DNA of 64,000 bases. Source: Camelus ferus (Eukaryota). The notes under the pieces were generated by a model that worked only from the letters and a program-made list of their open reading frames with translations, was not told the DNA's origin and searched no databases. Location of the stretch: positions 26,102,001 to 26,166,000 of the forward strand of contig NC_045717.1 of NCBI RefSeq assembly GCF_009834535.1, in the 5' to 3' direction. Position numbers and translations under genes: made by a program. Shown here in pieces: positions 12,301-49,205 of the stretch (positions are counted from its first letter, which is position 1; each line of letters opens with the position of its first letter).

Positions 12301-12830
12301 CTCCTCCCGCTCGCCCCCGCCCCGCCCCCTCCCTCCTCCCCAGCCCACCCGCCCCGCCCCCCGCCGCCCCGCCCCCACCCGCCTCGCCCCGCCCCGCCGG
12401 GCGCCGCACCGACAAGATGGCGGCGGGTGGGAGCGGCGGGCGCGCGTCTTGCCCGCCGGGGGTCGGCCCGGGCGCGGGGGGCGGCCCCGGGCCCAGCGCC
12501 AACGCCGCCCCGGCCCCCGGCAACGCGGCCGCCGCCGCCGCGCCGGCCCCCGCCGCCCCCGGGCCGCCCCCGCAGGTGTCCGGGCCGGGCGCGCAGGCCG
12601 CGGCGGGCGGAGAGCGGGCGGCCGAGGAGCCGGGGGCGGCGGCGCTGCTGCGCGAGCCGGTCTACAACTGGCAGGCCACCAAGCCCACGGTGAAGGAGCG
12701 CTTCGCCTTCCTCTTCAACAACGAGGTGCTCTGCGACGTGCACTTCCTGGTGGGCAAGGGGCTCGGCGCGCAGCGCATCCCGGCGCACAGGTGGGCCGCC
12801 GTCCCGGGACCCGGGACCTCCCCGGGACCC
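12290..12830 (+). promoter_or_regulatory. BTBD2: BTBD2 CpG-island promoter and exon 1, TATA-less with multiple Sp1 boxes
   Basis: Repeated CCCCGCCCC/CCCGCCC at 12310-12400, very high CpG density, directly before the ATG. Confidence 0.85.
12417..12790 (+). CDS. BTBD2: BTBD2 coding exon 1 (374 nt)
   Basis: [15 protein letters not shown]...[42 protein letters not shown]. Donor AG|gtgggc at 12791. Confidence 0.96.
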
Positions 12831-14451: not shown

Positions 14452-14884
14452 TGTAGTGGGTTGAATGGTAGCCCCCAAGAAGGCCTGTCCACGTCCTGAC
14501 ACCCAGAACTGGGGAATGGGACGTAATTTGGAAAAAAGGTCTTTGCAGATGTGAATAAGAGTTTCAGAAAGAGACCATCCTCAGTTTTCTCAGTGAGCCC
14601 TAAATCCAGTGACAAGTCTCCTTCTCCTTATAAGATACAGGAGAAGCCACTGATGACAGAGGCAGAAACTGGAGGGACGCAGCCACAAGCCAAGGGAGGC
14701 CTGGGGCCCCCAGGAGCTGGAAGAGGGGGGAGGACCCTCCCCGGGAGCCTCTGCGGGGAGCACAGCCCTGTGACATCCTGACCTTGGACGTGTGGCCTCC
14801 CACAACGTGAGAGGATAAATTCCTGTTGTTTCAAGTCACCCAGTTTGCAGGACTTTGGCAGAGCAGCCCCAGGAAACCAGTGCA
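14452..14884 (+). mobile_element. MLT1B/C LTR, near full length
   Basis: Starts tgtagtgggttgaatggt. Internal 'gcagccacaagccaagg' and 'ataaattcctgttgtttcaag'; ends 'gcagccccaggaaaccagtgca'. Confidence 0.85.
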
Positions 14885-15789
14885 CCTGGTCTAACTGGAG
14901 AAAATAACAGATAAACCCAGCTTGGGGACATCCTGCAGGACACCTGCCAGTCTTCCAGACAGTCATGGGAGGAGCCTGAGGACACAGTTTAAAAAGCAGA
15001 GTAGGGGAGGAGCTCACGCTGACTTTGAGGAAGGCCATGGGGTCTGGACCCGCCCTCTCCCAGGACCCACATGGGAGGTGGTCTTGGGTGAGGCTCAGAG
15101 TGGTCATGACTCTGGGTGCATGGTGACCGGGGGCGTGGGGCATCAGAGGGCCGGGGTCTGGCTTGGCATTTGTGACAGTGGCAGGCGCTGGCCCGGGTCT
15201 AGGCAAGCTCAGGCCTCACTAGGAGCCCCCCCCCCCAAGATTAACTTTGCAGCCCCCGCCCTCGGCCCAGGAGAACAGCTGGCGCACAGCAGGCACTCAG
15301 GAAAGCCTTGTCCCCTACCTGGCCAAGTCCAGCGTGTGCACTCACGGGCCCCCTCGGAGGGAATGCTGAGCACCTTCAGGGAAGCGCCGTGTGCCCTGCT
15401 GGCGGCCCTACGACATTAGCATCGAAAACATTCATCACAGAAAGCTCAGCCTGGCAGAGAAGTCCAGGAAGTGGAGCAGCCTGTGTCCGGGGTCCCTTGT
15501 CCTTCATCCACTTCCTTGTGCGAGCTTAGCCCAGTAGCACGGCTTCTGATGACTGTGGCTGTGGTGTGTTTCGAGAATTGCTGAGGGTGTTCTTCCCAGT
15601 CTTACTCCTTGTCAGGACTTTTTCATCTAGTCTCACACACTTAGCTCTTCCAGAATCAATCACCCATCCGTCCGTCCCTCCTTTCCTCCAGCAGCCATTG
15701 AAATGGTGCTGCCAGAAAACATCTCTTTGTCCTTGTGGACCTTACCCTCCAGCGCAGCACCAGCGAATTTGTGTCGAGAGCCAGAGAGT

Positions 15790-15960
15790 AAAGACTTGCC
15801 GCCGGCCACGCGGCCTCTGCCCCAGCTGCTTAACTGTCCAGAGCAGCACAGATGGAGCAACACATACATGCGTGGGCGTGTCTGTGTGCCAATAAAACTT
15901 TATTTACAAAAACAAGTGATGGGCCAGATTTGGTCCAAGGGCTGTGATTGGCCAGCTCTC
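15790..15960 (+). mobile_element. MER58A fragment
   Basis: 'gggcgtgtctgtgtgccaataaaactttatttacaaaaacaag...gggccagatttggtcc'. Confidence 0.7.
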
Positions 15961-15999
15961 CCCTTACTGATTCCCGGCCGGACTGGTCTTCCCAAAGTT

Positions 16000-18900
16000 T
16001 GGGGGAGCTGATCGTTTAGAATATGAAGTCTGTCTGGGAACACGGCTCTTTCCGTGTATCCAGGGCGTGTTTGTGTGTCCTTAGGAAAGTGGTGTAATTT
16101 CTCAAGTAGCTTGTGCGTGTTCACTGTGGAGTTTTTGCTTAGTTATTTTTTGTTTTTTTCCTCTGTTGTGAGTAATTTGTTACATTTTTTTTTCTAGCTG
16201 GCTCCTTCTGGGGAGCTATAGACTTCTTGCTTATGTATCTTTATCTGATGCGAACAAGTTCTTCTGAAGCCGTCTTCGTGTTGGTAATTTTTCAGCTGGT
16301 TCTGTGGTCTGGCGCTGCCCAGTAGGCTTTTCTGTAACGACGGGAAGGTTCTAGCTTTGTGCTCTCTGGGCCTGGCCACAGTCACACGTGGCTGTTGAGC
16401 GCTTGAAGTGTGGCTCTCGCAACCGAGGAACTGAATCTTCTATCTCACTTAATTTTAATTTAGATTTACATAAGCCCTGTGTGACTAGCAGCAGTGACGC
16501 TGGACGGGGCAGTCTTAGAATTTCAGATGAGAGAATCGCGGCATGGGCAGTCAGTTTCTCTTTCCCACTCGTGTTTCTGCCTCGTGTTTTTCTCTGTTCT
16601 GGCTGCACTTCCGACCATCCAGGCACTGCTCCGTGTCAGAGATGTTGTTTGCAGTTAAATGTGGGCATTGATGCTGGTCTCTGACAAATTCTCTTTAACA
16701 AGAGAACAAGTTTCTTTCCATTCCTTGTTCTCTGAGAGCGTCCATGAAGTCTGGGTGGGGGGTGCTACCGAGAGCTTTGACTGGAGTCCGGTTTGTTTGA
16801 TCTGACAGTGGGCTGTGTGGAGAGTCTCTGCACTGGTGGGACACCCGGTGGCGCCCAGCCTAGGGGAGCTGCCGTCACCCCGAAAGGCCCCTGTCTCCAC
16901 TTGCACCAGCCCTCCTCCCACCCCGAAGCCCGGGCCATCGGTGATCTGTTTTCTGCGTCTCTAGTTACGCTGTTCTAAGAAATTTCATACGGGAGCGATG
17001 GAATCTGTGGGCTTTGGTCTGGCTTCTTTCACTTAGTGTCCTGTTTTTGAGGCCCATCCACGACTTGGCATCAGCAGCGCGTTTCTGTTTCTTGCTAAAG
17101 GAAGTCACTGCTGAACTCCACTGCATGGGTGGACCGCGGCTGTTCCAGTCCCCCGTCAGGGGCCGTTTGGGTTGTTCCCAGCTTTTCCCGACGGGGAGTG
17201 ATGCGGCTGTGAACGGCTGTGTGGAAACCTGTGTGTGGAGGCGTCGCTCCCTCTCTTGGGCAGATACTCAGGGCTTGGATGTTGGAATTACAGGGTGACG
17301 CTTGTACATGACATTTTAAGAAACTGCCAAGCTGTGCTCCCAGGTGGCCTCCTCGCGGTGCCCCGGCCTCCACGGTGTCTTTGGCCTCAGAGGTGAGCTG
17401 GGAAGCGTTCCCGCCTCTCCTCTCGGGACGAGTTTGTGCAGCGTTGGTGTTACCTCTCCTGGCGTGCTTGGCAGCGTTCCCCTGGGAATCGGCTTTTCTT
17501 TGTGGGAAGACTTTTTTGGGGGAGGGGGAGCTAGGGTTATTTGTTTACTGGGATTGAACCCAGGGCCTTGCGCACGTGCTCCACCCTCCCTGCCGTGGGG
17601 GGGGGGTTCCACTCCTGCTTCACTTATTTGCTCCCCGTTTGCTTAGGCTCCCCCCTCTCCGTGAGTTCTGACAGTCCGTGTCTTCGAGCACTTTAGGGCC
17701 TGTAGTGGTGCTCCCTCTTTCAGCCGTGTTTTTGGTAACCTGTGTCTCTCCCTCTTCTTGGTCAGTCTCTCCAAAGTTCTCGCCATGGTTGACTTCCCCC
17801 TAAGAGAGCAACCTTTCAGCTTCGTGGGTCTGGCTCTGTTTTCCCACCCCCGGTTTCAGAGATTCCTGCTCGCACGTCTGTTGCTCCCTTTGTGCTTTGG
17901 GTCGGACTTGCGCTTCATCCTCCAGGTCCTGGAAGCGGGAGCGCACCCCGCGGACTTCAGGTCTGTACTGACGCGTGTGTGCCGTGCGCCTCGGAGCCCT
18001 ATTGCGGCTGCACCCCTGACACTCTGATGAGCCGTGTTTGCATTTTCAGTCCGGTCAAGAGCCTGTCTAGGTCCCCTTGTGTTCCTTCTCTGACCCGAAG
18101 GCTGCTTAGAAGGGTTGGTCCGTTTCCAGATACTTGGGGACGTCTCCGATGTCTTTCTGTTGTTGGTGTAGAGTTGAACTCCTCCGTGTGTGGCCGCTCT
18201 CAGGGCTTCCACGTGTCTGGGTGTGGCCTCGGGCTGGCGTGCCCCCGAGAATGGGCCGGCGTGCTCGAGGGGAGCCTGCCTCCCGCGCCGTCGGCGGAGG
18301 TCCCGCAGCGCTGGGCTGGCCATGCGGCCTCAGGCTCGTGTCCCGGCCGGTGGTGCTAGGTTGTTCTGTCCGTTTTGGAGACTGAGGCATCGGAACCTCC
18401 AATGATAATGGGTAGATTGTCCCATTGTCCTCAGTTTCTGCTTTGTGTACCTGGGGACCCTGTTTCGCGTTCATTTGCATCGTTACCTGTTGCTGGTGTC
18501 CTGACCCTCCGTTCACAGGAAACTTCCGTTCCCCAGGGAGGCTCCTCGCCTCCCCGTCTGCTGTGTCTGCTGTGAGTGCAGGCACTCGGCTCTCCGGCGG
18601 TCTCCGGCTTTCCCTGTCTTCTGCCTTCATCCCTCTGTGTGTCTGGATGTCACACGTTGGTGTGTGTCCTTCTCCATGTATTGTGTCAGGAGCCTCTGAC
18701 GTCCCTCTGTCCCATCTCCTGTGACGTGAGTCTTGGCCTTGGGGTAAGTTCCCCCCTGGATGTCACCCTCCCCGAGGGATACTCTGGGACTGTACAGACC
18801 CCCCGCTTTCCTCCTACTTTGTGCGCTGGTGCAGCACCGTGGGCTGGTGGCTCTTGCTGGAGAGGGTCATTTACGCTGGCGTCCGCCGTATGATGAGTGC

Positions 18901-19300
18901 CTGTTTCTGTAACTCCTGCGTTTGCTAACTGGAATTCTAAAAGGAAGAGCTGTTCCTTAGCCCTAACACATTCCTCGAGTTACATACTCCATCCTCACCG
19001 GCTCGTGGATGTCTGTGTTACTGTGTGGGTCACCATCTGGTAGGAATGTCATTTGGTTGCTCCTGTGGTCCCAGGTCTGGCTGTCGGGAGTCCGAACAGC
19101 TGGCTTCTGTGTCTCTTCCCTTCAGCATCTCCCCCTCACGTTGGGAGCATTTCTTTACTTCCTGGCCCCACAAGATCCTCCAGGCTCTTTGTGGCACCTC
19201 CCCTGCCCAGCCCCAGCCCTGGAAGGAGCCTGGGTCCTTTTAGTGGAAGGTGGTATTTAGCAGCCAAGGTGTGCATTCTGAGTGTGCCCAGGGCTGCTGG
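16000..19300 (-). mobile_element. Fragmented old L1 cluster (ORF2/3' parts), strongly GC-enriched
   Basis: L1-like phrases 'gtctgttttctg...gtctggcttctttcacttag' and 'ttttctttagtggaagtggtatttag'. Boundaries approximate. Confidence 0.55.
17513..17590 (-). mobile_element. Vic-1-like SINE remnant with internal deletions
   Basis: 'ggagggggagctagggttatttgtttactgggattgaacccagggccttg'. Confidence 0.6.
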
Positions 19301-19715
19301 GGTGTTGATGGTTAGAGACGGTCTGAGCAGATGGAGCGAGGAAGTGCACTGACACACACATCCCCCTGTTCACTTCGGTCTCTCTCCATCCACCCTTCCA
19401 TCCATGCACCCACTGAAAGCCATGAGATCATCCTGAGTCCTCTGACTCCGGTTCAGCCCTGCAGAGCTCATTCCAGCCTCCCCTCCCCTCCCCTAACTCT
19501 CTTCTCCCTTGATGAGAACCCCGGCTCTTACTCTCCACACTTCTGCTTGGTGGCGCAGACCAAGTGCGTAGAGTAACCCTCACCCGTGAAGAGTGCTCTT
19601 CCCGAGTGAAGCACAGACTCTGGGTGCAGTTCTTCTGGCCTGTAACCCGTTTCCCAAGGGTACGTAGCTGGTCTTTTCTTCTCCTCCCCTTCAGGGTAGT
19701 ATTTAATTGAAAATA

Positions 19716-20420
19716 TTTTTTTTAATTGTGGTAAAATACACAGACCATAAATTCACCATCGTAACCACTCGTTAGAGCTCAGCTCAGCGGCGTTAAGCTC
19801 ATTCACACTGTTGTGCCGCCCTCCCCACCACCGTCTCCAGGACTTTCTCATCTTCCCAAACTGCAGCTCTGGCCCCATGAAACACCGACTCCCCCTCCCC
19901 TGCCCTGGTCCCACCATCTACTTCCTGTCTCTGTGGATGCGACTCCCCCAGGGACCTCCTGTGAGTGGGATCAGGCCGCATCTGTCCCGTGTGTCTGGCT
20001 CTCCCCCTGAGCATCTTGTCCTCAGGGCCGTCCACGTTGTAGCCTGCGTCAGAATCTCCTTCTGTTGAAGCTGATTGGCACTCCTTGCACAGAGGGACCG
20101 CACTGTGTGTGTCCATCGCCTGTCAGTGGACGCTGGGTTGCTTCCATCTTCGGCCACCTGGGGGCTGTGCTGCCGGGAGCACTGGTGCACAGGGTTTGTG
20201 TGGACGTGAGTGCATCTCTCTTGGGCACACGCTGCTGGGCCAGGTGGCCACTCTGTGTTCAGCCCCAGCCTGGCTTGCACCACGGCCACATACCTTACGT
20301 GCCCACTAGCCGTGCACGAGGGCTCCGATTTCTCCACATCCCTGGTGACTCTTGCCATTGCTTGTGTTTCTTATTCCAGCTGGCGGTCCTGGTGGTGCCT
20401 TGCTGTGGTTTTGATTTGCT
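19716..20420 (-). mobile_element. L1MB-type 3' end
   Basis: 'ttttttaattgtggtaaaatacacagaccataaattcaccatc'. The minus-strand ORF 19918-20358 has L1 ORF2-like 'DVEKSEPSCTASGHV'. Confidence 0.8.
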
Positions 20421-20829
20421 ATGTTTACACGGTTTTGAGGATGGATAGAAGAGGCCCTGCGGGGACGGGCTTGGTGGCCAAGGGTCCGGGCAAGCAGGGC
20501 TGTGGGTGGAGGAAACATGCGTTTGATCAGACGAGCCCCTCGGACCCGGGCCTTGCCGGTCCTGGGGCTGTCACTGCACCCGCCGAGGGCTCTGGGGGTG
20601 TGTGACCGTCTGGCATCCCGGCTCCACACAGACACACCAGGCCCAGCTGGGCGACTCTTCCTGACAGTGAACCTTTGGGGGAGGTTTTCCCCGCAGAAGG
20701 TCAAGCTGCCGTGTGAGATCCAGGCAGAGAGGAGGACAGGAAGCTACTTTCTTTGTTCAGCACGTGCGGGAGCACAGCTCTGGGCCGGGACCCGGCCTCC
20801 GAGGATGCGGTGGGGCTGCGAGCTGAGTT

Positions 20830-21190
20830 GGAGGGGCGTCCTGCAGCGGCCGCAGCAGAGCACCACAGGTGGCTGGGCAAGACCCCAAGGCCCCCCTTGG
20901 TTCTGGAATCTGAAGTCCAAGAGCCAGGGGTGGCAGGGCCAGGCTCCCTCCGGGTGCCCCAGGGGTGCAGCTTCAAGGGGCTCCGGGCATCCTGGGCTCA
21001 TGGCCACCTTGCTCCGGTCTCCCCATGTGTGGGTCTAAAGCTCCCTTACAAGCCACTGTGCTGGGGCCCAGCCTGGACCAGGGCGATCTCATCCTAGCTG
21101 GTGTCACCTGCGCAGACCCGACTTCCAAATGCAGTCCCACTGTGACGCTCCAGGTGGACGTGATGCTGGGGACACTGCTCACCCCATGTC
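20830..21190 (-). mobile_element. MLT1 LTR remnant
   Basis: 'gagcaccacag...gttctggaatctgaagtccaag...cagggcgatctcatc...acttccaaat'. Confidence 0.65.
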
Positions 21191-21934
21191 ACTCAGTTTC
21201 CCACCTGGCCCTGGCTTGGGTCTGGCCCTCGGGGTGCTCGTGAGCCCTGGGCCGGATTGGGGACTGAGACAAGGGCCTGGCAGGGCCCGGAGGCACACGT
21301 CCCACCATGGAGAAGGAGGTGGGAGGTGGGGGAGAGAGGGTTCTCGGGGAGAAGAGGGCACTGCTCACTAGGGGCTGTGGGAAGGCCGCCCCAGCACTGG
21401 GCAGAGGCCAGGAAGTGGGCTGAGGGGCTGGCTCTGCCCCATCTGCCAGTTCCAGAGGTTTCCAAGTCAGGGTGGTGGCTCAGAGCCCTGCCTGTGTCAC
21501 AGTCGGGACCCTGGGAGGGGCTGTGATGCAGGGGCCTTGCAGACCCAGAGGACAGGGGCTTTGCAGGGGCAGCCATTGAGCTGGGCCCCAGGCTGACTTT
21601 GCCTCTGGGGGGACGCTGTCTGGAGGCAGGCCCTGGGGACCGTGGGTGGGCAGCACAGAGTGGGCATGTCATGAAGGGCAGACCCCAGTGGCCTCCGCGA
21701 GGCCACTCGCCTCCTAATGCTCCCCTGGCCTTGACGCCCTTCCCTGCGGACTCAGCCCGGTTCCCCTGTCCCCACCAGGCCTTCCCTGACCCTTGCTTTG
21801 CCACGGCCCTGTGTCCTCCTTTCTACCCCACTGTCAGGCTGTCTGTGCGCTGGACCCATGGCCGCCTCCCTGCAACAAGGCCAGGGTTCCCATGCTCTGG
21901 CCCGAGCACAGGGGAGCTGTGTGCAGAGCAGGCG

Positions 21935-22020
21935 AGGGAGTGAGTGAGGGAGTGAATGGTGGGGGAGAGTGAATGAGGGAGGGGGAGTGAATGAGGGAGG
22001 GAGGAGTGAAGGGGGAGTGG
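21935..22020. repeat. Purine-rich (GAGTGAATGAGGGAGG)-like tandem repeat
   Basis: gagtgaatgg/gagtgaatgaggga units are visible. Confidence 0.8.
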
Positions 22021-22317
22021 GCACCAGCCAGAGCGCAGGTGCAGTGGGAGCTGGCAGAGCCCTAAGCCCTCTGTCCCAGGGAAGTGCTTCTGCTTCTCTG
22101 GCCTCTGTCGCTGTTGACCCACCTCCACTGCCTTCTTGCTCCTTGGCGCCTTCCTTCCGGAAGCATCCACTGCAGGCTGCTCCGGGCATAGCGTCCACTG
22201 CGGTGCTGGCAGGGGAGCCACAGCTGCGGGGACCCTCCCTGACACACCCTGGGGTCCCCGACGGCCCCCACCCCACCGGGCTCGGGGAAGAGGGACTGGT
22301 GGGCCACCAGCAGGTGA

Positions 22318-22461
<144 letters not shown>

Positions 22462-22619
22462 TAAGACTCCCCAGGTCCTTGCTGCGCGGGTGCGGGACCG
22501 ATAGCCTGATGTTTAAAAAATACAGACCCCTGGTGACGTGGCGTCCAGAGCCCCCAGCTTTCTAGAGGTTCCTAGAACTCGCCTCCCCAGTGAGGGGTGG
22601 GCTCTGGAGGCCCCTGCCC

Positions 22620-23000
22620 CACATCTGTTTTTGTGTTTTTTGTATCAAGATGTAATTCACATACCACATACCACATACCACATATCACACATCACACAGC
22701 TCACGCACTTAAAGTGTACGGTTCAGTGGCATTTAGTACATTCAGAGTTGTGCCCAATTCCTCTGCCCAATTCCAGAACATGCCCTCAAAAGAAACCCCA
22801 TCCCCATGAGCAGTCACACCCCTTCCTCCCCCAGCCCCTGGCAGCCAGGAGCCCCCTCCCCGTGTCTGGGGACTGGCCTGTTCCGGACGCCTCACATCCG
22901 TGGACTCACGCTGTGTGTCCTCCTGTGTCTGCTTCTCTCCCTGAGCACCGTGCTCTCAGGGTCCGGCCCCGTGGGAGCGCGTGGAGGTCCCTCAGTTTTC
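22620..23000 (-). mobile_element. L1MB-type 3' end containing a (CACATAC)n microrepeat
   Basis: 'agatgtaattcacataccac...cacttaaagtgtacggttcagtggcatttagtacattcagagttgtgc'. Confidence 0.8.
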
Positions 23001-23109
23001 ATCCTCTGTGGTCAGTGGAGTTTTGGAAGGAGTAACCTAATGTAAGAATTTAAAATTTCATCTATGTACTGTTTTGAGTTGCAGGTCTCGTCTCCCAAGC
23101 GCTGTAGGA

Positions 23110-23235
23110 CAGCGCAGTGGGCGCGGGGCGGGGCCTCGCGCGCGGGGGCGGGGCGGTGGGCGGAGCCCCCAGGCCGGCGCCCCGCCCCGCCAGGCCCCTT
23201 TCTTCTCCCGAGGCGCTGGCGTAGATTGGGTGACT
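23110..23235. promoter_or_regulatory. Small intronic CpG cluster with four GC boxes and an inverted CCAAT box
   Basis: GGGGCGGGG at 23125 and 23145, GGGCGG at 23158, CCCCGCCCC at 23180, ATTGG at 23225. Confidence 0.55.
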
Positions 23236-23739
23236 TTAAGGGTTATCCCAGCAGTGCAAATAGCTTTTTAATCGTCGAGTTAATTTTTTCCCCTTCAGAT
23301 TATAGAAATGGTATTGGCTCACAAAGAGAGAGTACTGAGAAGCGTAGGGAACAAAATGCACTGGGCGTGTGTCCCTCATCTCAGGGACAACGCAGCGGGG
23401 CCTCGCAGGCCAGCCGGTTTACATCGTGTGCCCCCCCTCCCCGCAATGTCCTGTCTCCTTTCCCTGTCTGGTGCTCACAGTCCCCCGCTGGGTGTGAATT
23501 GGTTCCAGTCACCTCCATGTGACATCCTTGACGCCTGTGGGCTGATCCTCTGTCTTTTTGCAACTTTTCAGAAGGTCCCCTCAGACCAGGGGCGGCAGGC
23601 TGCCTGCAGGGTTGGGGGCTCTTGTCTCCACGCCCCTCCCCCTCCCACTGCCAGAGCAACCTCCAAGGATTTCCAAACTGTGGGCAAGGCTGTGTGCCGA
23701 GAAAGCTTTATTTACAAAACAGGTGACAGAACCAGTGAG

Positions 23740-24455
23740 AGAAGCTTCATACTGTCCAGGATGGCTATTTTTAGAAAACAAAAAACCCAGAAAGTAACAA
23801 GAGTTGTCTCCAGGATGTGGAGAAATGGGGACCCTTGTGCACTTCCGGTGGGAACATGAAATGAGGCAGCCGCTGTGCAAAGTCCAGAGGGTCCTCAAAA
23901 AACTCAACATAGAATCACCATGTGCTCCAGCAGTGCCACTCCTCGGTGCATCCTGAGAGAAGGGAAACCAGGGACTTGAGACATTTGCACACCTGTGTTC
24001 ACAGCAGCACAAGGTGGGGACACCCCAAGTGTCCGTGAACAGATGATAGACGAACAAAATGTGGAGCACAGTGGAATATGTTACTCAGCCTTACAAAGGA
24101 AGGAGATTCTGGCACCTGCTACAACGTGGATGAACCCGGAGAACATGACACTCAGTGAGAGAACCAGACACAGAAGGACACACACTGTGTGATTCCACTC
24201 ACAGGAGGTCCCTGGAGGAGTCACATCCACAGAGACAGGAAGTAGGACGGTGGGGCCAGGGCTGGGGGAGGGGCTGGGGAGTGAGTGTTTCGTGGGGACA
24301 GAGTTTCAGTTTGGGAAGATGAGAAAGCTCTGGAGACGGTGGTGGGGATGGTGGCACAACAGTGTGAATGCACTTAACGCTGCTGAGCTGTGCACTTAGA
24401 AATGGTTAAGATGGTAAAGTTTATGTTACGCGTATTTTACAATAATTTTTAAACC
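23740..24455 (+). mobile_element. L1MB-type 3' end
   Basis: 'ggatgtggagaaatggggaccc...cagccttacaaaggaaggagattctg...aatggttaagatggtaaagttttatgttacg'. Confidence 0.85.
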
Positions 24456-25373
24456 TAAAAAATTTGAAAGTCATGCAAAAAAAAGAAATCCAAACCAAAA
24501 ACAGGTGACAGGTCGCAGTAAGCCAGACCCTGCCTTAGACTGACCTTGGTGGGACCTAGGGTGGAAGGCTGTGCTGTCCCTGTGTCTCCTTGTCTGTCTC
24601 TCTCCCTATCTCTGTTTCCATCTCTATCTCTGGGCTTTGACAACCGTGGCTGCCCTCCTGAGAGGGTGACACTGTCTCCGTCGGTGTGAGGGGCTCCGCC
24701 ACCCCGTCTGCAGGCGTCCTGGGCTTCCCCGTTACAGGGCCTCCCCGGCACTGCAGACTTAGTGGTCATTCTCTGTCCCTGACCCCACAGGACACCAGCT
24801 GCTGCTATGCCGGCTGCTGGTGCGTTCTCAGGGGGGCTGAGTCCCAGGAGAGGGGACCCCTTCCAGGAATTTGCTCTTTGGGCTCCTCCAGACGCCGGGT
24901 GGGACACTCTGGTTGTTTTGCGTGGGTTGTACTGCTGTGAACCGGCATGGCCTCCTTTCTCCTGGGCACCGGGTGTGTGTGGGAGGGGCATGGGGCTGGG
25001 AGCCCCCAGCTGCCTTTGAGGCACTGCCACCAATGTGGCCAGAGTTCCGGCTTCTCCAGGCCTCAAGATTCTTCCGCTGGTTTTGTGATCTACCCTGGAC
25101 TTCTGACCCACATGTAGCGTCGGGCTGGTGGCGGGTGGCACTTCATCCCTGAAGTGGCCGAGCGTGGCAGTCAGCCTCACGGCCGAGTCAGGGGCTGTGA
25201 AAGCCTCTCTGCCTCCCAGGGCAAATCCCGTGGTGCCCACGGAGGAGCCAGGGGCTTCCCCCCAGGGCCACGCGCGGGGCCATCCCGTGGGACAGAGGCC
25301 TGCCTGCTGTGCAGACACGATTCCTGGTGCTGGCATCGTGAATCTGCTGAGCCTCGCAGCTTTTCCCGGGTAA

Positions 25374-25802
<429 letters not shown>

Positions 25803-26690
25803 TGAGTTTGGGGCGCCCTGGTAAATCTTGCCCCCGGGTGAGTGTCTCCCTCACCTCGCTAACCCTGACTCCAGCCCCTCCCCTGGTGGCACACGGTGAC
25901 TTTCTAGGTGGGTTTCGTTCAGTGCAGATTGTTGACGGGCTTCGCTACACTAATTAGGCTAAAAGTTTCCAGTTGGCGTTTTGGTGCCTTTTTGCGGGGG
26001 TCAGGTGTGGGGAGAAAAACACTGCGTTATTAGGTTTCTCAGAGGGGGCCCCTTTCCCTGCTGTAGGGTCCCACTGGCTGTGGCGGGGTGCCGGGAGGCC
26101 AGGTGCAGAGTCGCAGGGACAGGGCGGCCCCGAGTGGTCCGGTATCTGGGCCTCAGCTCTGACTGAGTCGCTGTGAAGGGTCAGAGCCAGGCCAGTCATG
26201 CGGGAACCACTCTTGGCCATTTGCTGAGAGCTGCCACCGTGAGAGGTGTCCCGGCCTCCAAGTCGGCCCCAGGGGGTGGGGGTGGAGCTGCCCCACAGCT
26301 TCCTTGGGTACATGGAAGCAGAATCTTCTCCCTCCCTGGCCCTGCCTGTCCCCTGTGCGAGTTCCCGGACCGTCAGAGGCACAGCACTGCGTGTCCTGCG
26401 GGTGGTTCTTGGCCCTCTCCCCAGGGCTCCTGCCTGACCGGAGTGGGCGGGCAGGGCCCGTCTCCAGCCTGAACCTCTAGGTGCCCAGTTGAGAGGTGCA
26501 GGCCTGGAGCAGACGTCACCTGACCCCCGCCCAGGCCGTTGGTTACTGTGAACCATAAGGAAGAAAATCCGCTGGCGCCTCGGCTGACACCTGTGCCGGC
26601 ACCCCCACCCCCCACCCCCAACTTGAAAGCCAGGACCAGTCTGAAGCCAGGGTCTGCCTGGGGCTGTGCTGACATGCTCTCCCTCGACAG

Positions 26691-26796
26691 GCGAGACTCT
26701 TCGACGAGCCACAGCTTGCCAGCCTGTGCCTGGAGAACATCGACAAGAACACGGCCGACGCCATCTCGGCAGAGGGCTTCACGGACATTGACCTGG
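26691..26796 (+). CDS. BTBD2: BTBD2 coding exon 4 (106 nt)
   Basis: [35 protein letters not shown]. Donor G|gtaagg. Confidence 0.96.
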
Positions 26797-26941
26797 GTAA
26801 GGCTGCTGGGCCGGGGCGGCCGGCTTGTCCTGCAGGGGCCCTGCCAGCCTGAGTTCCGCCTTCCGTTTGGCCCAGCCTATTCCCTGGGCCGAGCGGAGGC
26901 CAGAGTGCTGGGCCCACACGGCTGCTGGCCCCTCCCTGCAG

Positions 26942-27139
26942 ACACGCTGGTGGCCGTGCTGGAGCGGGACACCCTGGGCATCCGGGAGGTGCGCCTGTTC
27001 AACGCCGTCGTGCGCTGGTCGGAGGCCGAGTGTCAGCGGCAGCAGCTGCAGGTGACGCCCGAGAACAAGCGGAAGGTGCTGGGCAAGGCACTGGCCCTCA
27101 TCCGCTTCCCGCTGATGACCATCGAGGAGTTCGCTGCAG
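26942..27139 (+). CDS. BTBD2: BTBD2 coding exon 5 (198 nt)
   Basis: [35 protein letters not shown]...[13 protein letters not shown]. Donor G|gtaacg. Confidence 0.96.
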
Positions 27140-28029
27140 GTAACGGTCAGGGGGGCCGAGCCGCTGCTCTGGAGGAGCAAGACCCCCAGGGACCCCCAGT
27201 GTGACTCAGTCACGTGTCCCTTGGCCCGGCCACAGTGGGTCAGGGCCGGCTGCATCCACCTCAAGAGCCCCGCCAGCTTCTTTGTGCCGACAACACACTC
27301 GCCGTGTCCAGGGGAGAGGTTGCCCAGGCTCGAGAGTGTCACACTGGAGTCACCCACAGACGCTGACCCTCCCAGGTCCCCGCCTTCCTTTCCCCCCGCG
27401 TCTCGTGTATCCAGGCACGTGCGTGAGTGTGCAGGGCCCGGGGGGGGTCCTTGTCTTGGGTGCACTTCCTGGGGGCCAGGCTCTGGCGTCATCGTCCTTG
27501 ACAAGCCCCGTGAAGGGCTGGAAGTGCCTGGAGCTGAGGGGGCCACTGCTGCAGGGCCTTGGGGGCTCGGGCCCAGGTCCGGGTGGCCCTGACCCTGCCT
27601 CCCACCCCATGGGAATGCTCCTGTCTTGGCTGTGGCCAACTTGGGACCCACTGGGGCTAGGCCTCCCCTTTCTGTCAGTCTCATGGCTGGTGCCGACCGT
27701 GGTCCTGGAGCCAAACTGGCCTGGAAGTTTCTGGATGGGGCTCCATGATGCAGCCCCGCAGCTGCCCTGTCTCTCCTGGGTCCGTGCTGCCCCTGCTCCC
27801 ACCTGGGCTTAGGGTCGCCAGATTGAGTGACAACAGCCAAGAAACGAGGTTTTAGTGTTATCTCCCATGTGCAGCTGGCAGACATTTATCATACAGATCT
27901 GAAATTCAGACTTGACCAGGTGTCCTGCGTTTTAGCTGGCGGTCGCAGTGTTACGTCAGTGCTGGGGTGATCTCTGTGCTCTGGGAGTCACTCATCTGGC
28001 AGAGCCTTGGCGCCTCCCTAGTACCAGGC

Positions 28030-28200
28030 CTGGGGGCACAGCGGGGGGCTGCAGACGTGGGGCCAGGTCGTCCTCTGTGGGACGTCCTGGGGGGTGTGGA
28101 GCAGCCTCCCAGTCCCCACCTGCTCGATGCCAGAAGTCCCTCAGTCATGACAACCACAGATGTCCCCAGACATTTCCCAGTGCCCCCAGGTGAGAACCCC
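28030..28200 (-). mobile_element. MER20 remnant
   Basis: Reverse complement 'aatgtctggggacatctgtggttgtcatgact...ctggcatcgag'. Confidence 0.75.
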
Positions 28201-29243
28201 AGGCCAGGCTACGTGAGCCTACAGGAGCCTTGCTGGGCCCCTCTCTCTCCAGCCCTGCTTGCTCCCCCAGAACCGCTCTCCTCACAGTCCCTCAGCCCAC
28301 CTGGCCACCAGAGCCCCCTGGGGTCTCAGGCCCCTGTGACACCGCCACCACCTCCTGGAGTGCCATCCCCCCACCCGTGGCCATCTCACCACGCCTCCCG
28401 AGGGCCCCCCAGGCCGAATAGCCACCAACCACCCCCAGCTTGCCGGCGCCTGGGATGTGTGTGTCTGTCCTTCGGCATGAGCTGGGCCTGTGGCCTTGTC
28501 CCTCTGCGGCGGTGCCCACGGGGCTTCAGCTGTCACTCAGTGTGTCCTAGAGGATTCTCCTGCTTGTTCTGTTTAACTTGAAAATACAAGAATGTAGAAG
28601 TTTGAAAAAAAAACTTGCCAAAAGACTCGTGCGGCTGAGCATGTCCTGGCTGAGGTCTGATGGAGTTTCCCTTCTGCATTTTCCATACGGAGATTAAAAA
28701 AGTGGTTCATGTCTGGATTCAGTTTTGTATCTCACTTATTCACGTGCTCCATGGAAATCTCGCTCCCGTTGCTAAGATCTGTGCGTGTGGGGTGCGGGGG
28801 CTGTGAGCTGTGGCCGCCCTGCGGCAGAAGTGAGCTCAAAGCTGGTGAATGAGTGATTCCTGTCAAATGAGGACCGGGTCCTGGAGGCCTGGCGGGAGCC
28901 CTGTCCTGGGGCACGGGGTGGGGTGGGGCGGGCAGGGGGCGTGTAAGGCCCACCCCCCGTGGCCTCCCTTCGCTGTCTCATCGCTGTACCACGGGTCCCC
29001 TGTTTGGGGGCAGCGTCTCCCTGTTGCTGTAGGTGCCCCAGTGGACGAGCAGGGCAGCATGTGCTCTGTGGACCATCGGTGGTCCCAGGTGGAGACTGGG
29101 GAGTTCTGCCCAATTAGCCAGCGAATCAGAGCACTGGCTCCGGGTCTGCGTCAGACCGCTCCCCGGCGAGCAGAAGGGCATCGGCCCCCCGCGGGCGCTG
29201 CTTGTTCCCGTGCTGTTTTCCAGAGGATCGACCTCTGCTCTGA

Positions 29244-29612
<369 letters not shown>

Positions 29613-29645
29613 TAGTTCAGCATCTTCCTCCTCTGACCGAGTCAG

Positions 29646-29733
29646 GTTCTCCGTCAACAAGCGCATCTTCGTGGTTGGCTTCGGACTTTACGGCTCCATC
29701 CACGGGCCCACAGATTACCAAGTCAACATCCAG
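29646..29733 (+). CDS. BTBD2: BTBD2 coding exon 7 (88 nt)
   Basis: [29 protein letters not shown]. Acceptor gtcag| and donor |gtgccg. Confidence 0.93.
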
Positions 29734-30094
29734 GTGCCGCCCCGCCTCCAGCCCCCCCATATCCTTCTGCCGCCGCCTCCCTCCCCACCCCCCACCTCTC
29801 CCTAAGGTCGAATGTCTTCCCAACCCTCCCCGGCTCCGTATCCTTCCCCCTCCTTCCTTGTCAGGGGTCTGTCCCGTGTCTCCCACAAGGTAGAATGAAT
29901 GTTCTGGGGTCCACGGGACCCAGGACGATGCCTCCCCATCCCCCATTGGTCTCCTCCTTGAGGGTCACGAGCTGGACCCCACACCGCTGGCCTAGGGCTG
30001 GTTGGGGCTCAGCCCTCGGTCCGCCTTCCCCGGGTCCTGTGGGGGGCGGGGCAGGGGCGCCCGGGGTGAGCTGTGTCCGGCTCCTGCCCTGCAG

Positions 30095-30241
30095 ATTATC
30101 CACACGGACAGCAACACGGTCCTGGGCCAGAACGACACGGGCTTCAGCTGTGACGGCTCGGCCAGCACCTTCCGAGTCATGTTCAAGGAGCCGGTGGAGG
30201 TGCTGCCCAACGTCAACTACACCGCCTGTGCCACGCTCAAG
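30095..30241 (+). CDS. BTBD2: BTBD2 coding exon 8 (147 nt)
   Basis: [49 protein letters not shown]. Confidence 0.96.
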
Positions 30242-30546
30242 GTGGGCCTGATGTGCTCCCCCAACCAGGACCCTGACTGACCCCTACCCAGAACCTGGCC
30301 CCGATCCCTGAAACCAGCCCAGGACCCCAACCACAAACCACAGACTGACTCCGACCCCCAAACCTGAGCCAGGATCCCCACCCTGACCTCTTACCCTGAC
30401 TCCCAGTCCACTCCCCCCCCCCCACCGTGATGGGGCTGGGAGGGTTGCAGCCACGTTGTGGAGGCCATGGAGGGCCTGCTGCCCTGCCCAGCTGGGGTCC
30501 TGGGCCTCCTCCCTGACCTGCTGGGGTCCCCCCGCACCCCACGCAG

Positions 30547-30708
30547 GGCCCGGACTCCCACTATGGCACCAAGGGCCTGCGCAAGGTGACCCACGAGTCG
30601 CCCACGACGGGGGCCAAGACGTGCTTCACCTTCTGCTACGCGGCCGGGAACAACAACGGCACGTCGGTGGAGGACGGCCAGATCCCCGAGGTCATCTTCT
30701 ACACCTAG
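30547..30708 (+). CDS. BTBD2: BTBD2 coding exon 9 (162 nt including TAG)
   Basis: [53 protein letters not shown]. Confidence 0.96.
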
Positions 30709-40932: not shown

Positions 40933-41766
40933 TTTTTTAAAAAAGCCCCTAAGTTCTATGGCTTCCAGGAAGCATCAAAGAAACGGAAGTGCCATTTCTG
41001 TACACTTTGTAAAGCAAGACCTAGACGCACACGCCGTGGGGGCACCCCCAGCCGCTCTGCCCACGCAGGACGCGGGGCTCCAGGGACCACTGGCAGCACT
41101 GACGGGGCTGCCCGCTCCGCACGCACCTGCAGGGCTGGGGACGGGCTTTAAGGCGCTTGTCTCCCACTGCTCGGCCAGCAGCGCACAGCCCACACAAGAA
41201 GCCCGCACGCCCGGCGCTGCCGGCTGGCCACGAGGCAGCGCCCCGAGTTCCGGGCCAGCAGCGGCCCCTTGAGCAGGTGCGCAAAACAGCCCGCGGGCCA
41301 TGCCCGCCGGCCCAGGCTTTGGTGCAGCATTTTGGTTGCCGGCCGCCCCCACCCCGCCTTCCCCTTTGGTTTGGGGAGGCCCAGGACGGGCTCACCCTCG
41401 GCAGCAACGCCCCCGCAGCGCCCCCTCGAGAAAACAGCCTTTGGATCGAGGGAGAAGCTGCATTGAATCACACTAACGGTGGCGGCGGTGGCGGCGGGCC
41501 CACTACTCACTCAGCAGGCGGGCGGGGAGTGGGGCAGGACGGCCGCTGTGGTTTTCTCTTTTCCTTGTTTTAAAGTTAATGCTCTCGGAGGGGAGGACTA
41601 GACACAGGTGTAGAAACCTCGGCCAAAGTCTTACGTGAAGGAAGTGGCCCCCCGTGGGGGCGGCAGCTCAGCCAGCCCTGCAGCTTGCATCTGGCTGTGG
41701 CCACGGGGCCACGGCAAGCTGGCCCGAGGGGCTGCAGCGGGAGGACTCAGGGGCCGCCGCCCAAGG

Positions 41767-41821
41767 TCACTTGTGTCGCTGCAGCGATTTTCTCTTCCTC
41801 CTCTTGAAGAAACAGCAGCAC
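41767..41821 (-). CDS. CSNK1G2: CSNK1G2 last coding exon (exon 12): (K)CCCFFKRRKRKSLQRHK*
   Basis: Acceptor ctcttccag| and TGA at 41769-41767. Confidence 0.95.
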
Positions 41822-41915
41822 CTGGAAGAGGCGGGAACAGGGTGGGCGGTGGGCGCAGGCTGGGGGGGGGGTGAAGGCGGGCGCAGGGGGTGGAAGGGGG
41901 CGGGGCAGGCCTCAC

Positions 41916-42023
41916 TTGGTGTCGTCAGCCACCTCCACCTCTGCGGGGGCCGTGATGGGGGCATTGGAGTGACCGGCGGTGGGGTCAGTCGGCATTCAGC
42001 TCCCCGTTGGTGGAGTTCAGTGC
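41916..42023 (-). CDS. CSNK1G2: CSNK1G2 exon 11 (108 nt, one base longer than the reading frame allows)
   Basis: cag|GCA CTG AAC TCC ACC AAC GGG GAG CTG AAT GCC GAC TGA. The +1 frame resumes [23 protein letters not shown]; donor AA|gtgagg. Confidence 0.92.
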
Positions 42024-42108
42024 CTGCAGGGAAAGTGGGGGAAGGGAAGTCCTGTGGGCCCCGCTTTGCGCCCTCCCGTGTTGTTAGGTCCTCTGCCCGG
42101 CCCCTCAC

Positions 42109-42192
42109 CTGGTTTTTGCTGTGTAGCAGGGCTTTGTCCCGAACTTGAGGCTGCGAGGGCAGGTCGGTGTGGACCGTGCCGATGGGCGTGGG
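42109..42192 (-). CDS. CSNK1G2: CSNK1G2 exon 10 (84 nt)
   Basis: [28 protein letters not shown], flanked by cag| and |gtgagg. Confidence 0.95.
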
Positions 42193-42302
42193 CTGCAGGG
42201 ACAGGACCCAGTGCTGAGGCCCCGGGCCCGCTCTCACCCCCCTCCACGTTGCAAGGCTGGTAGACCAGCATCCCGCCCCCACGCACCGGGGCCCCCACGC
42301 AC

Positions 42303-42451
42303 CAGGGGCTTCCCAGCCCAGTCGTACTCATAGTCGAACACAAAGCCGCTGCGGTCAAAGAGGTCGGTGAAGAGCTTGCGCAGGTAGTCGTAGTCGGGCT
42401 TCTCGAAGAAGTCCAGGCGCCGCACATAGCGCAGGTACGTGGCCATCTCCT
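42303..42451 (-). CDS. CSNK1G2: CSNK1G2 exon 9 (149 nt)
   Basis: [50 protein letters not shown]. Confidence 0.96.
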
Positions 42452-42573
42452 CTGCGAAAAGCGGCATGGCTGGGTGCGTGGAGGCACGGGGACGGTCCGG
42501 AACGGGGGCGCCTGGGGTGGGGGGCCCTGCAGGGAGCAGGGACCCGGGGAACGCGGGGCAGGGCGGCCCTCAC

Positions 42574-42658
42574 CTGGGAAGCTCTCGCAGAGCACCTCGA
42601 TGGGCGTGGCTCGCTTGGTGTCCCCGATCTTCTGGTAGCGCTCCTTGAGCGTGTCCGC
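42574..42658 (-). CDS. CSNK1G2: CSNK1G2 exon 8 (85 nt)
   Basis: [28 protein letters not shown]. Confidence 0.95.
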
Positions 42659-42736
42659 CTGCGGGGAGCTGGGTCAGCGCCTCAGCACGCACAGCACGCA
42701 GGAGACCCCGCCCCGCCCGGGCCCGGCGCCGCCCAC

Positions 42737-42822
42737 CTTGAGCCCCTGCCAGGGCAGGCTGCCGCGCAGGAAGTACATGAACATGTGGCCCAGCGCCTCC
42801 AGGTCGTCGCGGCGGCTCTGCT
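42737..42822 (-). CDS. CSNK1G2: CSNK1G2 exon 7 (86 nt)
   Basis: [29 protein letters not shown]. Confidence 0.96.
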
Positions 42823-42872
42823 CTGCGGGGGGACAGCAGGTCAGCGCGGCCCCCACGCCCCCCCGCCCGGCC

Positions 42873-43012
42873 NNNNNNNNNNNNNNNNNNNNNNNNNNNN
42901 NNNNNNNNNNNNNNNNNNNNNNNNNNNNNNNNNNNNNNNNNNNNNNNNNNNNNNNNNNNNNNNNNNNNNNNNNNNNNNNNNNNNNNNNNNNNNNNNNNNN
43001 NNNNNNNNNNNN
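42873..43012. other. N-run (140 nt) hiding the 3' half of CSNK1G2 exon 6
   Basis: Undetermined bases where the DFG motif to 'THLGK' is expected. Confidence 0.99.
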
Positions 43013-43121
43013 TGTGGATGGCGTGCTGACGCTTGGTGCCCGGCCGTCCCACCAGGAAGTTCTCCGGCTTCACGTCGCGGTAGATGAGGCTCTTGGTGTG
43101 CACGTACTCCATGCGCGTGAT
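42887..43121 (-). CDS. CSNK1G2: CSNK1G2 exon 6 (visible 43013-43121; 3' end inferred inside the N-run)
   Basis: [36 protein letters not shown] is visible. End inferred from an expected 235-nt length. Confidence 0.85.
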
Positions 43122-43220
43122 CTGCGGGCAGGCCGCAGCGGTCGCCCTGTGCCCCGCCCCTCCAGCCCCGCCCTCGCCCGCCAACCCCCCCACCCCGCAC
43201 TCCCGCTCCCGAGCCCGCAC

Positions 43221-43369
43221 CAGCTGGATGGCGATCATGAGCACCGTCTTGAGCGNNNNNNNNNNNNNNNNNNNNNNNNNNNNNNNNNNNNNNNNNNNNN
43301 NNNNNNNNNNNNNNNNNNNNNNNNNNNNNNNNNNNNNNNNNNNNNNNNNNNNNNNNNNNNNNNNNNNNN
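43221..43369 (-). CDS. CSNK1G2: CSNK1G2 exon 5 (visible 43221-43255; 5' part inside the N-run)
   Basis: [11 protein letters not shown]|gtgcgg is visible. Start inferred from an expected 149-nt length. Confidence 0.8.
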
Positions 43370-43387
43370 NNNNNNNNNNNNNNNNNN
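43256..43387. other. N-run (132 nt)
   Basis: Undetermined bases. Confidence 0.99.
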
Positions 43388-43446
43388 AGACTCATGCGAT
43401 GCCCAGGCGGGCTCCTGCTGTGCCCCCGAAACCAGCCCCAGGGTAC

Positions 43447-43516
43447 CTGCCGCGCTGAGCTGCTTATAGAAGCGGTACTCCAGGTGCAGCTGCGGGGCCC
43501 GGGACTTGATGGGCTC
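43447..43516 (-). CDS. CSNK1G2: CSNK1G2 exon 4 (70 nt)
   Basis: [23 protein letters not shown]. cag| and G|gtaccc boundaries. Confidence 0.95.
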
Positions 43517-43634
43517 CTGCGAGGGACGAGGACATGTGCGGATGTTACCCAGGGTGCAGGCCTGGCACTCCTGCTCGGGGTCCCGGGGTAGGGGACAGAC
43601 CAGGCTGGGGGTTGGGGGCAGGGCCTGGACTCAC

Positions 43635-43675
43635 CAACTTGATAGCTACGTATTCGTTTGTGTAGAGATTCTTTC
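43635..43675 (-). CDS. CSNK1G2: CSNK1G2 exon 3 (41 nt)
   Basis: GKNLYTNEYVAIKL. Donor |gtgagt. Confidence 0.95.
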
Positions 43676-45129
43676 CTGCGGGAGGAAAGGCACATCAGGC
43701 CGGCAGGGCCCCGGCACTCAGAAGACCCAGCCCCGCCCACCCCTCCGAGGGGCACCTCCTTCTCCACTGTGAACTTGGCCCAGCCTTCTCAGGCCCGGGA
43801 GGGAAAAGGGCGCCCACAAGGAATGGCCACACCGCTGTGGGCACTGCCATCTGCCCCCGAACCCTCATCTCCTGGGCCCCAAGCTGCCGTCCCGCCCTCT
43901 CCTCAGTCCCCACCCAGCTCTCACCCAGGCACCCCAACCACCCTCCAACCCCCCAGCCCTGCCTCGGCCCACTCAAGGGGCTGTTCCCAAGTCCTCTGCG
44001 GGATCCTTCCCGCCGGCACGCCAACGCGTTCCAATTTCTCCCATCTAGAAAAGGGAAAATAGAACAAAGAGCCCTGGTGACCCCAAGACCCTCCAGCTGC
44101 AGCTGTAGGGAACTCGGAGACACCACACCCCTTGCCCACGCCCTCCCTCCGTCCTGTCCCCCACACCACCTGACCTGCACTCCCCCCCCAGCCCCAGGGA
44201 CCCCCTCATCCCCACCGGTCACCCTACAGCCTGGCTCCTGTAACTCAGTTCAGCTGGGCACGGCCTCCTGCAACCGGAAGACCAGCCCCACCCCCATCGC
44301 TGTGCAGCAAGGACCAGACCAGGAGACACCCCCCACCCCTGCCCTGTAGCTTCCCCGAATGACAGAGCCCAGCAGGGCCGGGGCAGAGCCTGAATCCTGG
44401 GGTTACAAACAGACCCTGGACCTGGACCTCCACGTGCCCACAGAGAACGAGCCAATGTGCTCAACCCCACAAAACTGCAAAAAACCCAAGCTCCAGAACT
44501 CAACAAAGTTCAGACCTAGGACAGGGCAGTGATGCTGCTGGGTGACAGTTCCCACCATGCAGGGGCCGCCGCAGGCCTTTGGTGTGCGTTTGCCAGGAGC
44601 TGCGCACAGCACCGAGTACACCCCCATCCCTCTGCCCCTCCCGCCGGCTTCCTGGGTCCTCAGCGCTGGGAAGGGGGCCCCACGGCGCACTGGCCCGCAG
44701 GCAACTTCACGCCTGAGTCACTGCGCTGCTGCTGGTCTTGTTCCCAAGAGGATCCAGCCTGGAAGAGGCCTCGGCTCGCTCTCCAGCCCGCTGCAGCCGG
44801 ACAGTCTGCACTGGTTTGGCCCCACCCATGTCATGGCCGAGGCACCACCGATCCCACCCCACAGGCGGAGGTCTGGGTTCCCACTTGTCTCTGCCCCACG
44901 CTGGGCGTCTGCATCGTTGGCGCCTGGCCTGGGGGTCTTCAGCTCAGCCTCGGCTCTTCAGCGCCTGGGTTTCCATCAGAGTTTATAGTCAGCTCGTCCA
45001 TTTCCCTAGAAACCTGCAGGGAGGACATCGAGTCGGCAGGAGAGCCGCCCCGGCCACTGCTCCGGGCGGGCCGCTCGGCGATGTTCTCGGCGCTCGGTGC
45101 AGAGGGCTTGCATGGCCTCCGTTAGATGT

Positions 45130-48962: not shown

Positions 48963-49149
48963 CTAGCCGGAGCTCCCCGAAGTTGCCACAGCCTATCTTC
49001 TTCCCGACCCGGAAGTTGGGGCCCACCATCAGGACCCCCGAGCCGGTCCCCGAGCTCCGAACGCCNNNNNNNNNNNNNNNNNNNNNNNNNNNNNNNNNNN
49101 NNNNNNNNNNNNNNNNNNNNNNNNNNNNNNNNNNNNNNNNNNNNNNNNN
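48963..49149 (-). CDS. CSNK1G2: CSNK1G2 first coding segment (exon 2); ATG inferred at ~49149 within the N-run
   Basis: [34 protein letters not shown] is visible (48963-49065). Donor G|gtgagc. Confidence 0.85.
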
Positions 49150-49205
49150 NNNNNNNNNNNNNNNNNNNNNNNNNNNNNNNNNNNNNNNNNNNNNNNNNNN
49201 NNNNN
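49066..49205. other. N-run (140 nt) hiding the CSNK1G2 start codon
   Basis: Undetermined bases. Confidence 0.99.

What the first reader, a model, noticed from the sequence alone, without database searches (positions are those of the whole stretch)
41981..41992. Apparent loss-of-function frameshift in CSNK1G2 exon 11 that removes the palmitoylated CCC tail
Seen: the minus strand reads AAT GCC GAC TGA CCC CAC where N-A-D-D-P-T is expected. Removing one base (near 41987) restores [24 protein letters not shown] and the phase needed by exon 12; the exon is 108 nt instead of 107. The stop (41987-41985) ends the protein at about residue 374 (human numbering) and lies 69 nt upstream of the last junction, beyond the 50-55 nt NMD rule. 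Established: CK1gamma kinases need the C-terminal cysteine cluster for palmitoylation and membrane targeting (e.g. LRP6 phosphorylation), and CSNK1G2 has been reported to restrain RIPK3 necroptosis in testis. Inference: either a natural null or soluble-kinase allele, or an indel error; nearby N-runs make an error quite plausible.
Basis: partly seen in the sequence, partly recalled or inferred. Interest (0 to 1): 0.72.

Follow-up and report, generated by a model that had tools for sequence, protein, structure and literature searches.

The report
One surplus base in camel CSNK1G2
The stop codon that seems to cut the membrane-anchoring tail off this camelid's casein kinase 1 gamma-2 comes from one surplus letter in the assembly; the best-matching public sequencing run lacks that letter, so the gene is most likely intact and the finding ordinary.

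Summary
On the minus strand, CSNK1G2 exon 11 (42023..41916) is 108 nt instead of 107 and reads GCC GAC TGA CCC. The stop lies at 41987-41985, 69 nt before the last junction, after the residue that matches human D374.

It is very probably not biology:
- The run that holds this region best (X1, 0.96 of sampled words) has a contig at word depth 44.9. It lies on 41957-42075 with no other difference and one letter left out at 41988. That gives GCC GAT GAC CCC, which is A-D-D-P in frame.
- A 60-nt query in which every 31-mer spans the surplus base found no listed run, while 20 runs hold the surroundings.
- Everything else visible in the gene is intact. Splice sites are canonical, and the codons after the break are 100% identical to a rhinoceros CK1 gamma-2.
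- All 163 vertebrate CK1 gamma tails fetched keep N-[A/T]-D-D-P-T without a gap.
- The window carries a second surplus single base (43590) against two other runs.
- Earlier notes of this scan, which I did not check, list many "+1" frameshifts in conserved genes of this genome.

Verdict: assembly insertion error (about 0.87). A private or heterozygous allele of the assembled animal is not excluded (about 0.1). Lineage-wide loss is effectively refuted.

The parts
41987..41988 (-). The surplus single base. The tool places the letter missing from the X1 contig at 41988, which gives GAT GAC. If the placement is one off (41987), the true sequence is GAC GAC. Either way the reading is Asp-Asp in frame.
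   Evidence: table 4 and table 8: one letter left out, 0 other letters, contig word depth 44.9. for the window letters.
41985..41987 (-). In-frame TGA created by the surplus base
41916..42023 (-). CSNK1G2 exon 11, 108 nt in the window (107 expected). It reads [12 protein letters not shown] / [23 protein letters not shown](K). The acceptor is cag and the donor is gtgagg.
   Evidence: Both halves are 100% identical to rhinoceros CK1 gamma-2 P0151.
41767..41821 (-). Coding part of the last exon: (K)CCCFFKRRKRKSLQRHK and the natural stop at 41769-41767
42109..42192 (-). Exon 10, [28 protein letters not shown], intact
42303..42451 (-). Exon 9, (E)[49 protein letters not shown], intact
   Evidence: One search gives 100% identity to many CK1 gamma-2 fragments.
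42575..42821 (-). Two further intact exons: [29 protein letters not shown] and [28 protein letters not shown]. Both have canonical splice sites.
43590..43590 (-). A second surplus single base in the window, in an intron. The window reads CCCC[T]ACCCC and two independent contigs read CCCCACCCC.
   Evidence: L001 and L002,

Best explanation
The window's assembly carries one surplus base in CSNK1G2 exon 11. This is a consensus (insertion) error of the assembly, not a change in the animal's DNA. The real sequence reads ...AAT GCC GA(T/C) GAC CCC ACC..., that is N-A-D-D-P-T. The exon is then 107 nt, the frame runs on into exon 12, and the protein ends with the normal CCCFFKRRKRKSLQRHK tail. No truncation, loss of palmitoylation or nonsense-mediated decay follows.

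Shown: the in-frame sequence exists at full contig depth in the closest public run. No listed run holds the frameshifted words. The rest of the gene is intact.

Inferred: the surplus base arose in assembly or polishing rather than in the germ line of the assembled animal.
For: 1; the X1 contig (312 nt, word depth 44.9) covers 41957-42075 with 0 other letters and one letter left out at 41988, which restores the frame. X1 is the best holder of the region at 0.96 of words.
2; a 60-nt query in which every 31-mer spans 41987 (2 sampled words) listed no run. In one search, 14 DNA-like runs hold 0.91-0.96 and 6 RNA runs hold 0.49 of the surrounding 1.4 kb.
3; all other visible exons and splice sites are intact. 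The 23 codons after the break and exon 12 are 100% identical in protein to rhinoceros P0151, so there is no secondary decay.
4; 163 of 163 fetched vertebrate CK1 gamma tails read STNGEL-N[A/T]-DD-PTAGHS (one reads AN) without a gap, and 143 of 145 read CCCFFKRRKRK. Constraint is strong, so the prior for loss is low.
5; the window has another surplus single base (43590) against two independent contigs within 1.6 kb.
6. Leads only, not checked by me: 91 notes on this genome mention frameshifts. Many are '+1' in conserved genes, including MIDN and PALM within 0.9 Mb of this window. One follow-up (OR51E2) called its frameshift an assembly error.
Against: - X1 is a coded run, so I cannot show that it is the animal that was assembled. 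If it is another animal, the assembled one could still carry the base.
- Logan contigs drop minor alleles, so a heterozygous surplus base in X1 would not show.
- Only one run could be laid. X2, X5 and the RNA run X19 laid nothing, and the tool says its filter can cause this.
- rests on only 2 sampled words, and 'none was listed' is not 'none exists'.
- The surplus base is not in a homopolymer, which is the commonest place for consensus indel errors.
Confidence: 0.87

Rival explanations
1. This is a real but private allele. The assembled animal carries a 1-bp insertion in exon 11, heterozygous or homozygous, and the assembly reports that haplotype. The transcript would carry a stop 69 nt before the last junction. 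It would probably be partly degraded by NMD, or it would yield a kinase of about 374 residues without the Cys cluster, hence soluble.
For: The letters are in the assembly. X1 differs from the window at about one further place in 1.4 kb (0.96 of 135 words), so it may be a different animal or haplotype. Csnk1g2 knockout mice develop normally (PMC7673785), so a carrier would be viable.
Against: No listed run holds the words that span the base. The closest run is in frame. There is no secondary decay. Other notes of this scan, unchecked, report the same kind of '+1' lesion in many conserved genes of this genome, and one animal cannot plausibly carry all of them.
Confidence: 0.1
2. This is a lineage-wide loss or remodelling of CSNK1G2 in this camelid species or in camelids generally.
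For: Only the window letters support it.
Against: The best-matching run has the in-frame exon at depth 44.9. Runs labelled with three other organism codes hold the region at 0.91 of words, yet none is listed for the frameshift words. Downstream codons, splice sites and the natural stop are all perfectly kept.
Confidence: 0.02
3. The base is real but bypassed, by an alternative splice site, by ribosomal frameshifting or by stop-codon readthrough, so that the tail is still made.
For: None was found.
Against: The only internal cag in exon 11 would leave 25 nt, which is the wrong phase for exon 12 (read). Skipping the exon also shifts the frame. No relative has a stop or gap here. A simpler explanation is available.
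Confidence: 0.01

Closest known systems
Residual single-base insertion errors in draft long-read vertebrate assemblies, which produce false frameshifts in conserved genes
   Same: There is one surplus base in an otherwise perfect, strongly constrained exon. It is absent from an independent short-read-type contig at full depth. There is a second surplus base nearby. Other notes of this scan, unchecked, report many similar '+1' lesions in the same genome.
   Different: The site is not a homopolymer run. I could not see the assembly's own reads, so the error mechanism (platform, polishing) is not shown.
Mammalian CSNK1G2 (casein kinase 1 gamma-2) orthologues, for example rhinoceros P0151 and human P0190
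   Same: Exon order, phases and splice sites match. Exons 9, 11 and 12 are 100% identical in protein to P0151. The CCCFFKRRKRKSLQRHK tail is present. BTBD2 lies convergent downstream, as expected for this locus.
   Different: In the window, exon 11 has 108 nt instead of 107. Exon 10 differs from the nearest fetched relatives at 2 of 28 residues, which is ordinary divergence.
True unitary gene losses in camelids
   Same: Both present as a premature stop in a conserved gene of this genome.
   Different: A true loss shows several lesions shared between species and individuals. Here there is a single lesion, and it is absent from the closest run.

Membership tests
CSNK1G2 / CK1 gamma-2 orthologue | CK1 gamma kinase-domain and C-terminal exons in the known order, with matching sequence | tested here: met
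   Searches find the motifs [70 protein letters not shown] and [21 protein letters not shown], plus exon 9, in order on the minus strand. Exon 9 is 100% identical to CK1 gamma-2 fragments. The middle of the kinase domain is masked (N) and was not read.
CSNK1G2 / CK1 gamma-2 orthologue | CK1gamma_C tail (PF12605) ending in the Cys cluster CCCFFKRRKRK | tested here: met
   Exons 11 and 12 are identical to P0151, which carries PF12605. A direct Pfam scan of the short exon pieces gave nothing because they are too short.
CSNK1G2 / CK1 gamma-2 orthologue | Conserved neighbourhood (BTBD2 convergent at the 3' end) | tested here: met
   BTBD2 exons lie on the + strand from 12417 to 30705. That this is the expected neighbour comes from my own knowledge of the human locus.
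Assembly insertion error | The base is absent from independent sequence of the same or the closest genome | tested here: met
   (X1 contig, one letter left out, depth 44.9). (no run listed for the words that span the base).
Assembly insertion error | The base is absent from the assembled animal's own reads | not testable with these tools
Whether X1 is the assembled sample is unknown.
Assembly insertion error | Similar surplus bases occur elsewhere in the same assembly | tested here: inconclusive
   One more was found in this window (43590), but it could be a natural indel between animals. Many more are reported in unchecked notes of this scan. The BTBD2 exons in this window show no break.
Unitary pseudogene / natural null allele | The lesion is present in independent individuals or reads | tested here: not met
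Unitary pseudogene / natural null allele | Secondary lesions or relaxed constraint downstream of the first break | tested here: not met
   Downstream codons, splice sites and the stop are intact and identical to a functional orthologue.

The most novel reading that the evidence does not exclude
The surplus base is a real germ-line insertion carried by the sequenced camelid. That animal would be a natural carrier of a CK1 gamma-2 allele that is either degraded by NMD or makes a kinase-competent protein without its palmitoylated tail.
Probability: 0.1. Interest if true: 0.35.

Novelty: not a real feature. Interest (0 to 1): 0.08.

Why it matters
If it were real, a camelid lacking membrane-anchored CK1 gamma-2 would be a natural test of the kinase's role in restraining RIPK3 necroptosis in testis and of tail-dependent membrane signalling. 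The evidence says it is not real. The practical value is a warning. This assembly contains single surplus bases that mimic loss-of-function alleles in well-conserved genes, so '+1 frameshift' findings from this genome need read support before any biological reading. The N-runs here are length-preserving masks and say nothing about local assembly quality.

Tried and rejected
That call was lost and those places were not sent again.
- In the second read-laying run, X2, X5 and the RNA run X19 laid nothing. The tool warns that a filter can cause this, so I have no RNA evidence and no second DNA run.
- I tried to reach other camelid assemblies or transcripts through the protein tools.
  - Representatives search with exon 9 found only fragments from other mammals.
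  - Word search with the 171-aa minus-strand ORF that spans the site and with the 164-aa plus-strand ORF found no near-identical product.
  - Search with rhinoceros P0151, region 169-299, and cluster listing showed no camelid among the representatives or listed members, and none carries the window's exon 10.
- Exact look-ups of window ORFs returned only L001 and L002. Both stop at 42151, 164 nt short of the site.
- A pattern scan of metagenome contigs that allowed either allele found nothing.
- A Pfam scan of single exon pieces found nothing because the pieces are too short.
- A literature search for CSNK1G2 in camels found nothing relevant.
- Rejected readings: rescue by the internal cag acceptor (wrong phase), exon skipping (107 nt is not a multiple of 3), and selenocysteine or readthrough (no relative has a stop here).
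- I did not read or use the letters of L001 and L002 that lie under the window's N-runs.

Full report
**What is in the sequence**

On the minus strand the window holds the 3' half of CSNK1G2. Exon 11 starts at 42023 after the acceptor ...ccctgcag and ends at 41916 before the donor gtgagg. It reads GCA CTG AAC TCC ACC AAC GGG GAG CTG AAT GCC GAC TGA, that is [12 protein letters not shown] followed by a stop at 41987-41985. One base further on, the frame reads [23 protein letters not shown]. With the split Lys codon this joins exon 12 (41821 downwards), which reads CCCFFKRRKRKSLQRHK and ends at the natural stop 41769-41767.

The exon has 108 nt, where the phases of its neighbours require 107. 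The stop lies 69 nt before the last junction. In the human protein fetched as P0190, the last residue before the break is D374 and the Cys cluster begins at 399.

**The rest of the gene**

The visible exons upstream are all open and flanked by canonical splice sites. They are:
- EQSRRDDLE...WQGLK
- [12 protein letters not shown]...CESFP
- exon 9, 42451..42303
- exon 10, 42192..42109

Exon 9, both halves of exon 11 and exon 12 are identical in protein to a rhinoceros CK1 gamma-2, P0151. The break is thus a single lesion with no decay after it.

Among all the CK1 gamma proteins fetched, from sharks and bony fish to mammals, 163 of 163 read STNGEL-N[A/T]-DD-PTAGHS at this place (one reads AN) with no gap. 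In addition, 143 of 145 read CCCFFKRRKRK. The tail is under strong constraint.

**Is the base real?**

A search of public runs with 41300-42700 listed 14 DNA-like runs holding 0.91-0.96 of the sampled 31-mers and six RNA runs holding 0.49. I then asked for 41957-42016, a 60-nt stretch in which every 31-mer spans 41987. None was listed, though only 2 words were sampled.

The second, on 41957-42075, laid one contig of the best holder, X1. That contig is 312 nt long with word depth 44.9. It covers the whole stretch with no other difference and one letter left out at 41988.

Taken literally, that makes the + strand GGGGTCA-TCGGC, so the minus strand reads GCC GAT GAC CCC. If the placement is one off, it reads GCC GAC GAC CCC. 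The three other runs laid nothing. The tool says this can be a filter effect, so they are no evidence either way.

**Assembly quality around the site**

Two contigs from other runs (L001 and L002) are unspliced genomic DNA colinear with window 44180..42151. They yield two points:
- The N-runs 43256-43387 and 42873-43012 replace exactly 132 and 140 bases.
- The window has another surplus single base against both contigs, at 43590 (minus strand CCCC[T]ACCCC), besides three or four substitutions. This could be a natural indel, but it points the same way as the exon 11 lesion.

The BTBD2 exons in the same window (+ strand, 12417-30705) show no break.

Earlier notes of this scan on the same genome list 91 mentions of frameshifts. 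Many are '+1' or 'one extra base' in conserved genes. MIDN and PALM lie within 0.9 Mb of this window, and SLC4A2, CD19, RTEL1 and SIRT7 lie elsewhere. One follow-up (OR51E2) called its frameshift an assembly error. These notes are unchecked, so I treat them as context rather than support.

**Conclusion**

The best explanation is a consensus insertion error in the assembly (0.87). What remains open is whether X1 is the assembled animal, and whether that animal is heterozygous. Logan contigs drop minor alleles and the runs are coded, so a private real allele keeps about 0.1. A species-wide or camelid-wide loss is contradicted and by the lack of any secondary lesion (0.02). Bypass by splicing or recoding has no support (0.01).

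**What it would have meant**

The cited biology holds in the papers read. The C-terminal palmitoylation is thought to place CK1 gamma kinases at the membrane within the WNT signalosome (PMC9157009). Csnk1g2 knockout mice develop normally but show enhanced necroptosis and RIPK3-dependent premature testis ageing (PMC7673785). A real allele would therefore be tolerable in a carrier and of moderate interest. As it stands, the finding is an artefact.

**What I could not do**

I could not see raw reads of the assembled animal, RNA reads across exon 11, or other camelid assemblies. All routes through the protein databases, exact ORF look-ups and a metagenome pattern scan failed to return camelid sequence that covers exon 11.

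Noticed in passing
window 43590 (intron of CSNK1G2, minus strand): The window has a surplus single base (CCCC[T]ACCCC) against two independent Logan contigs, L001 and L002. On the + strand, both this base and the exon 11 one follow GGGGT(C). This may be a recurrent consensus-error context or a coincidence.
   Followed up: partly
window 42873-43012, 43256-43387, 49066-49205: The N-runs lie where kinase-domain exons are expected. For the first two, they replace exactly as many bases as colinear contigs have there (140 and 132). They are length-preserving masks, not assembly gaps. Their letters were not read.
   Followed up: partly
window 12417-30705, + strand: BTBD2 lies convergent with CSNK1G2. 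Its first exon starts [15 protein letters not shown]..., and the BTB, BACK and PHR exons end ...[10 protein letters not shown]. All exons seen are in single frames, and the short intron 29519-29646 has normal splice sites.
   Followed up: partly
window 5210-5282, minus strand: There is a tRNA-Leu-like element (ARAGORN, anticodon TAG; Rfam tRNA at only 33.9 bits against a gathering score of 29). The low score suggests a tRNA-derived SINE or pseudogene rather than a working tRNA gene.
   Followed up: partly
L001 861-1610 and L002 409-1158: Contigs from the two runs that hold L001 and L002 carry unspliced camelid host DNA. The collection's gene caller read a 249-aa 'Pkinase' product straight through exons and introns. 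Such read-through ORFs fill the protein databases with false CK1 gamma fragments (P0001-P0013 are examples).
   Followed up: no
window about 42151-42175 and about 41863: Contigs of three different runs (X1, L001, L002) all end near 42151-42175, and the X1 contig also ends near 41863. This hints at a branching point there, either a variant or a repeated word. Not examined.
   Followed up: no
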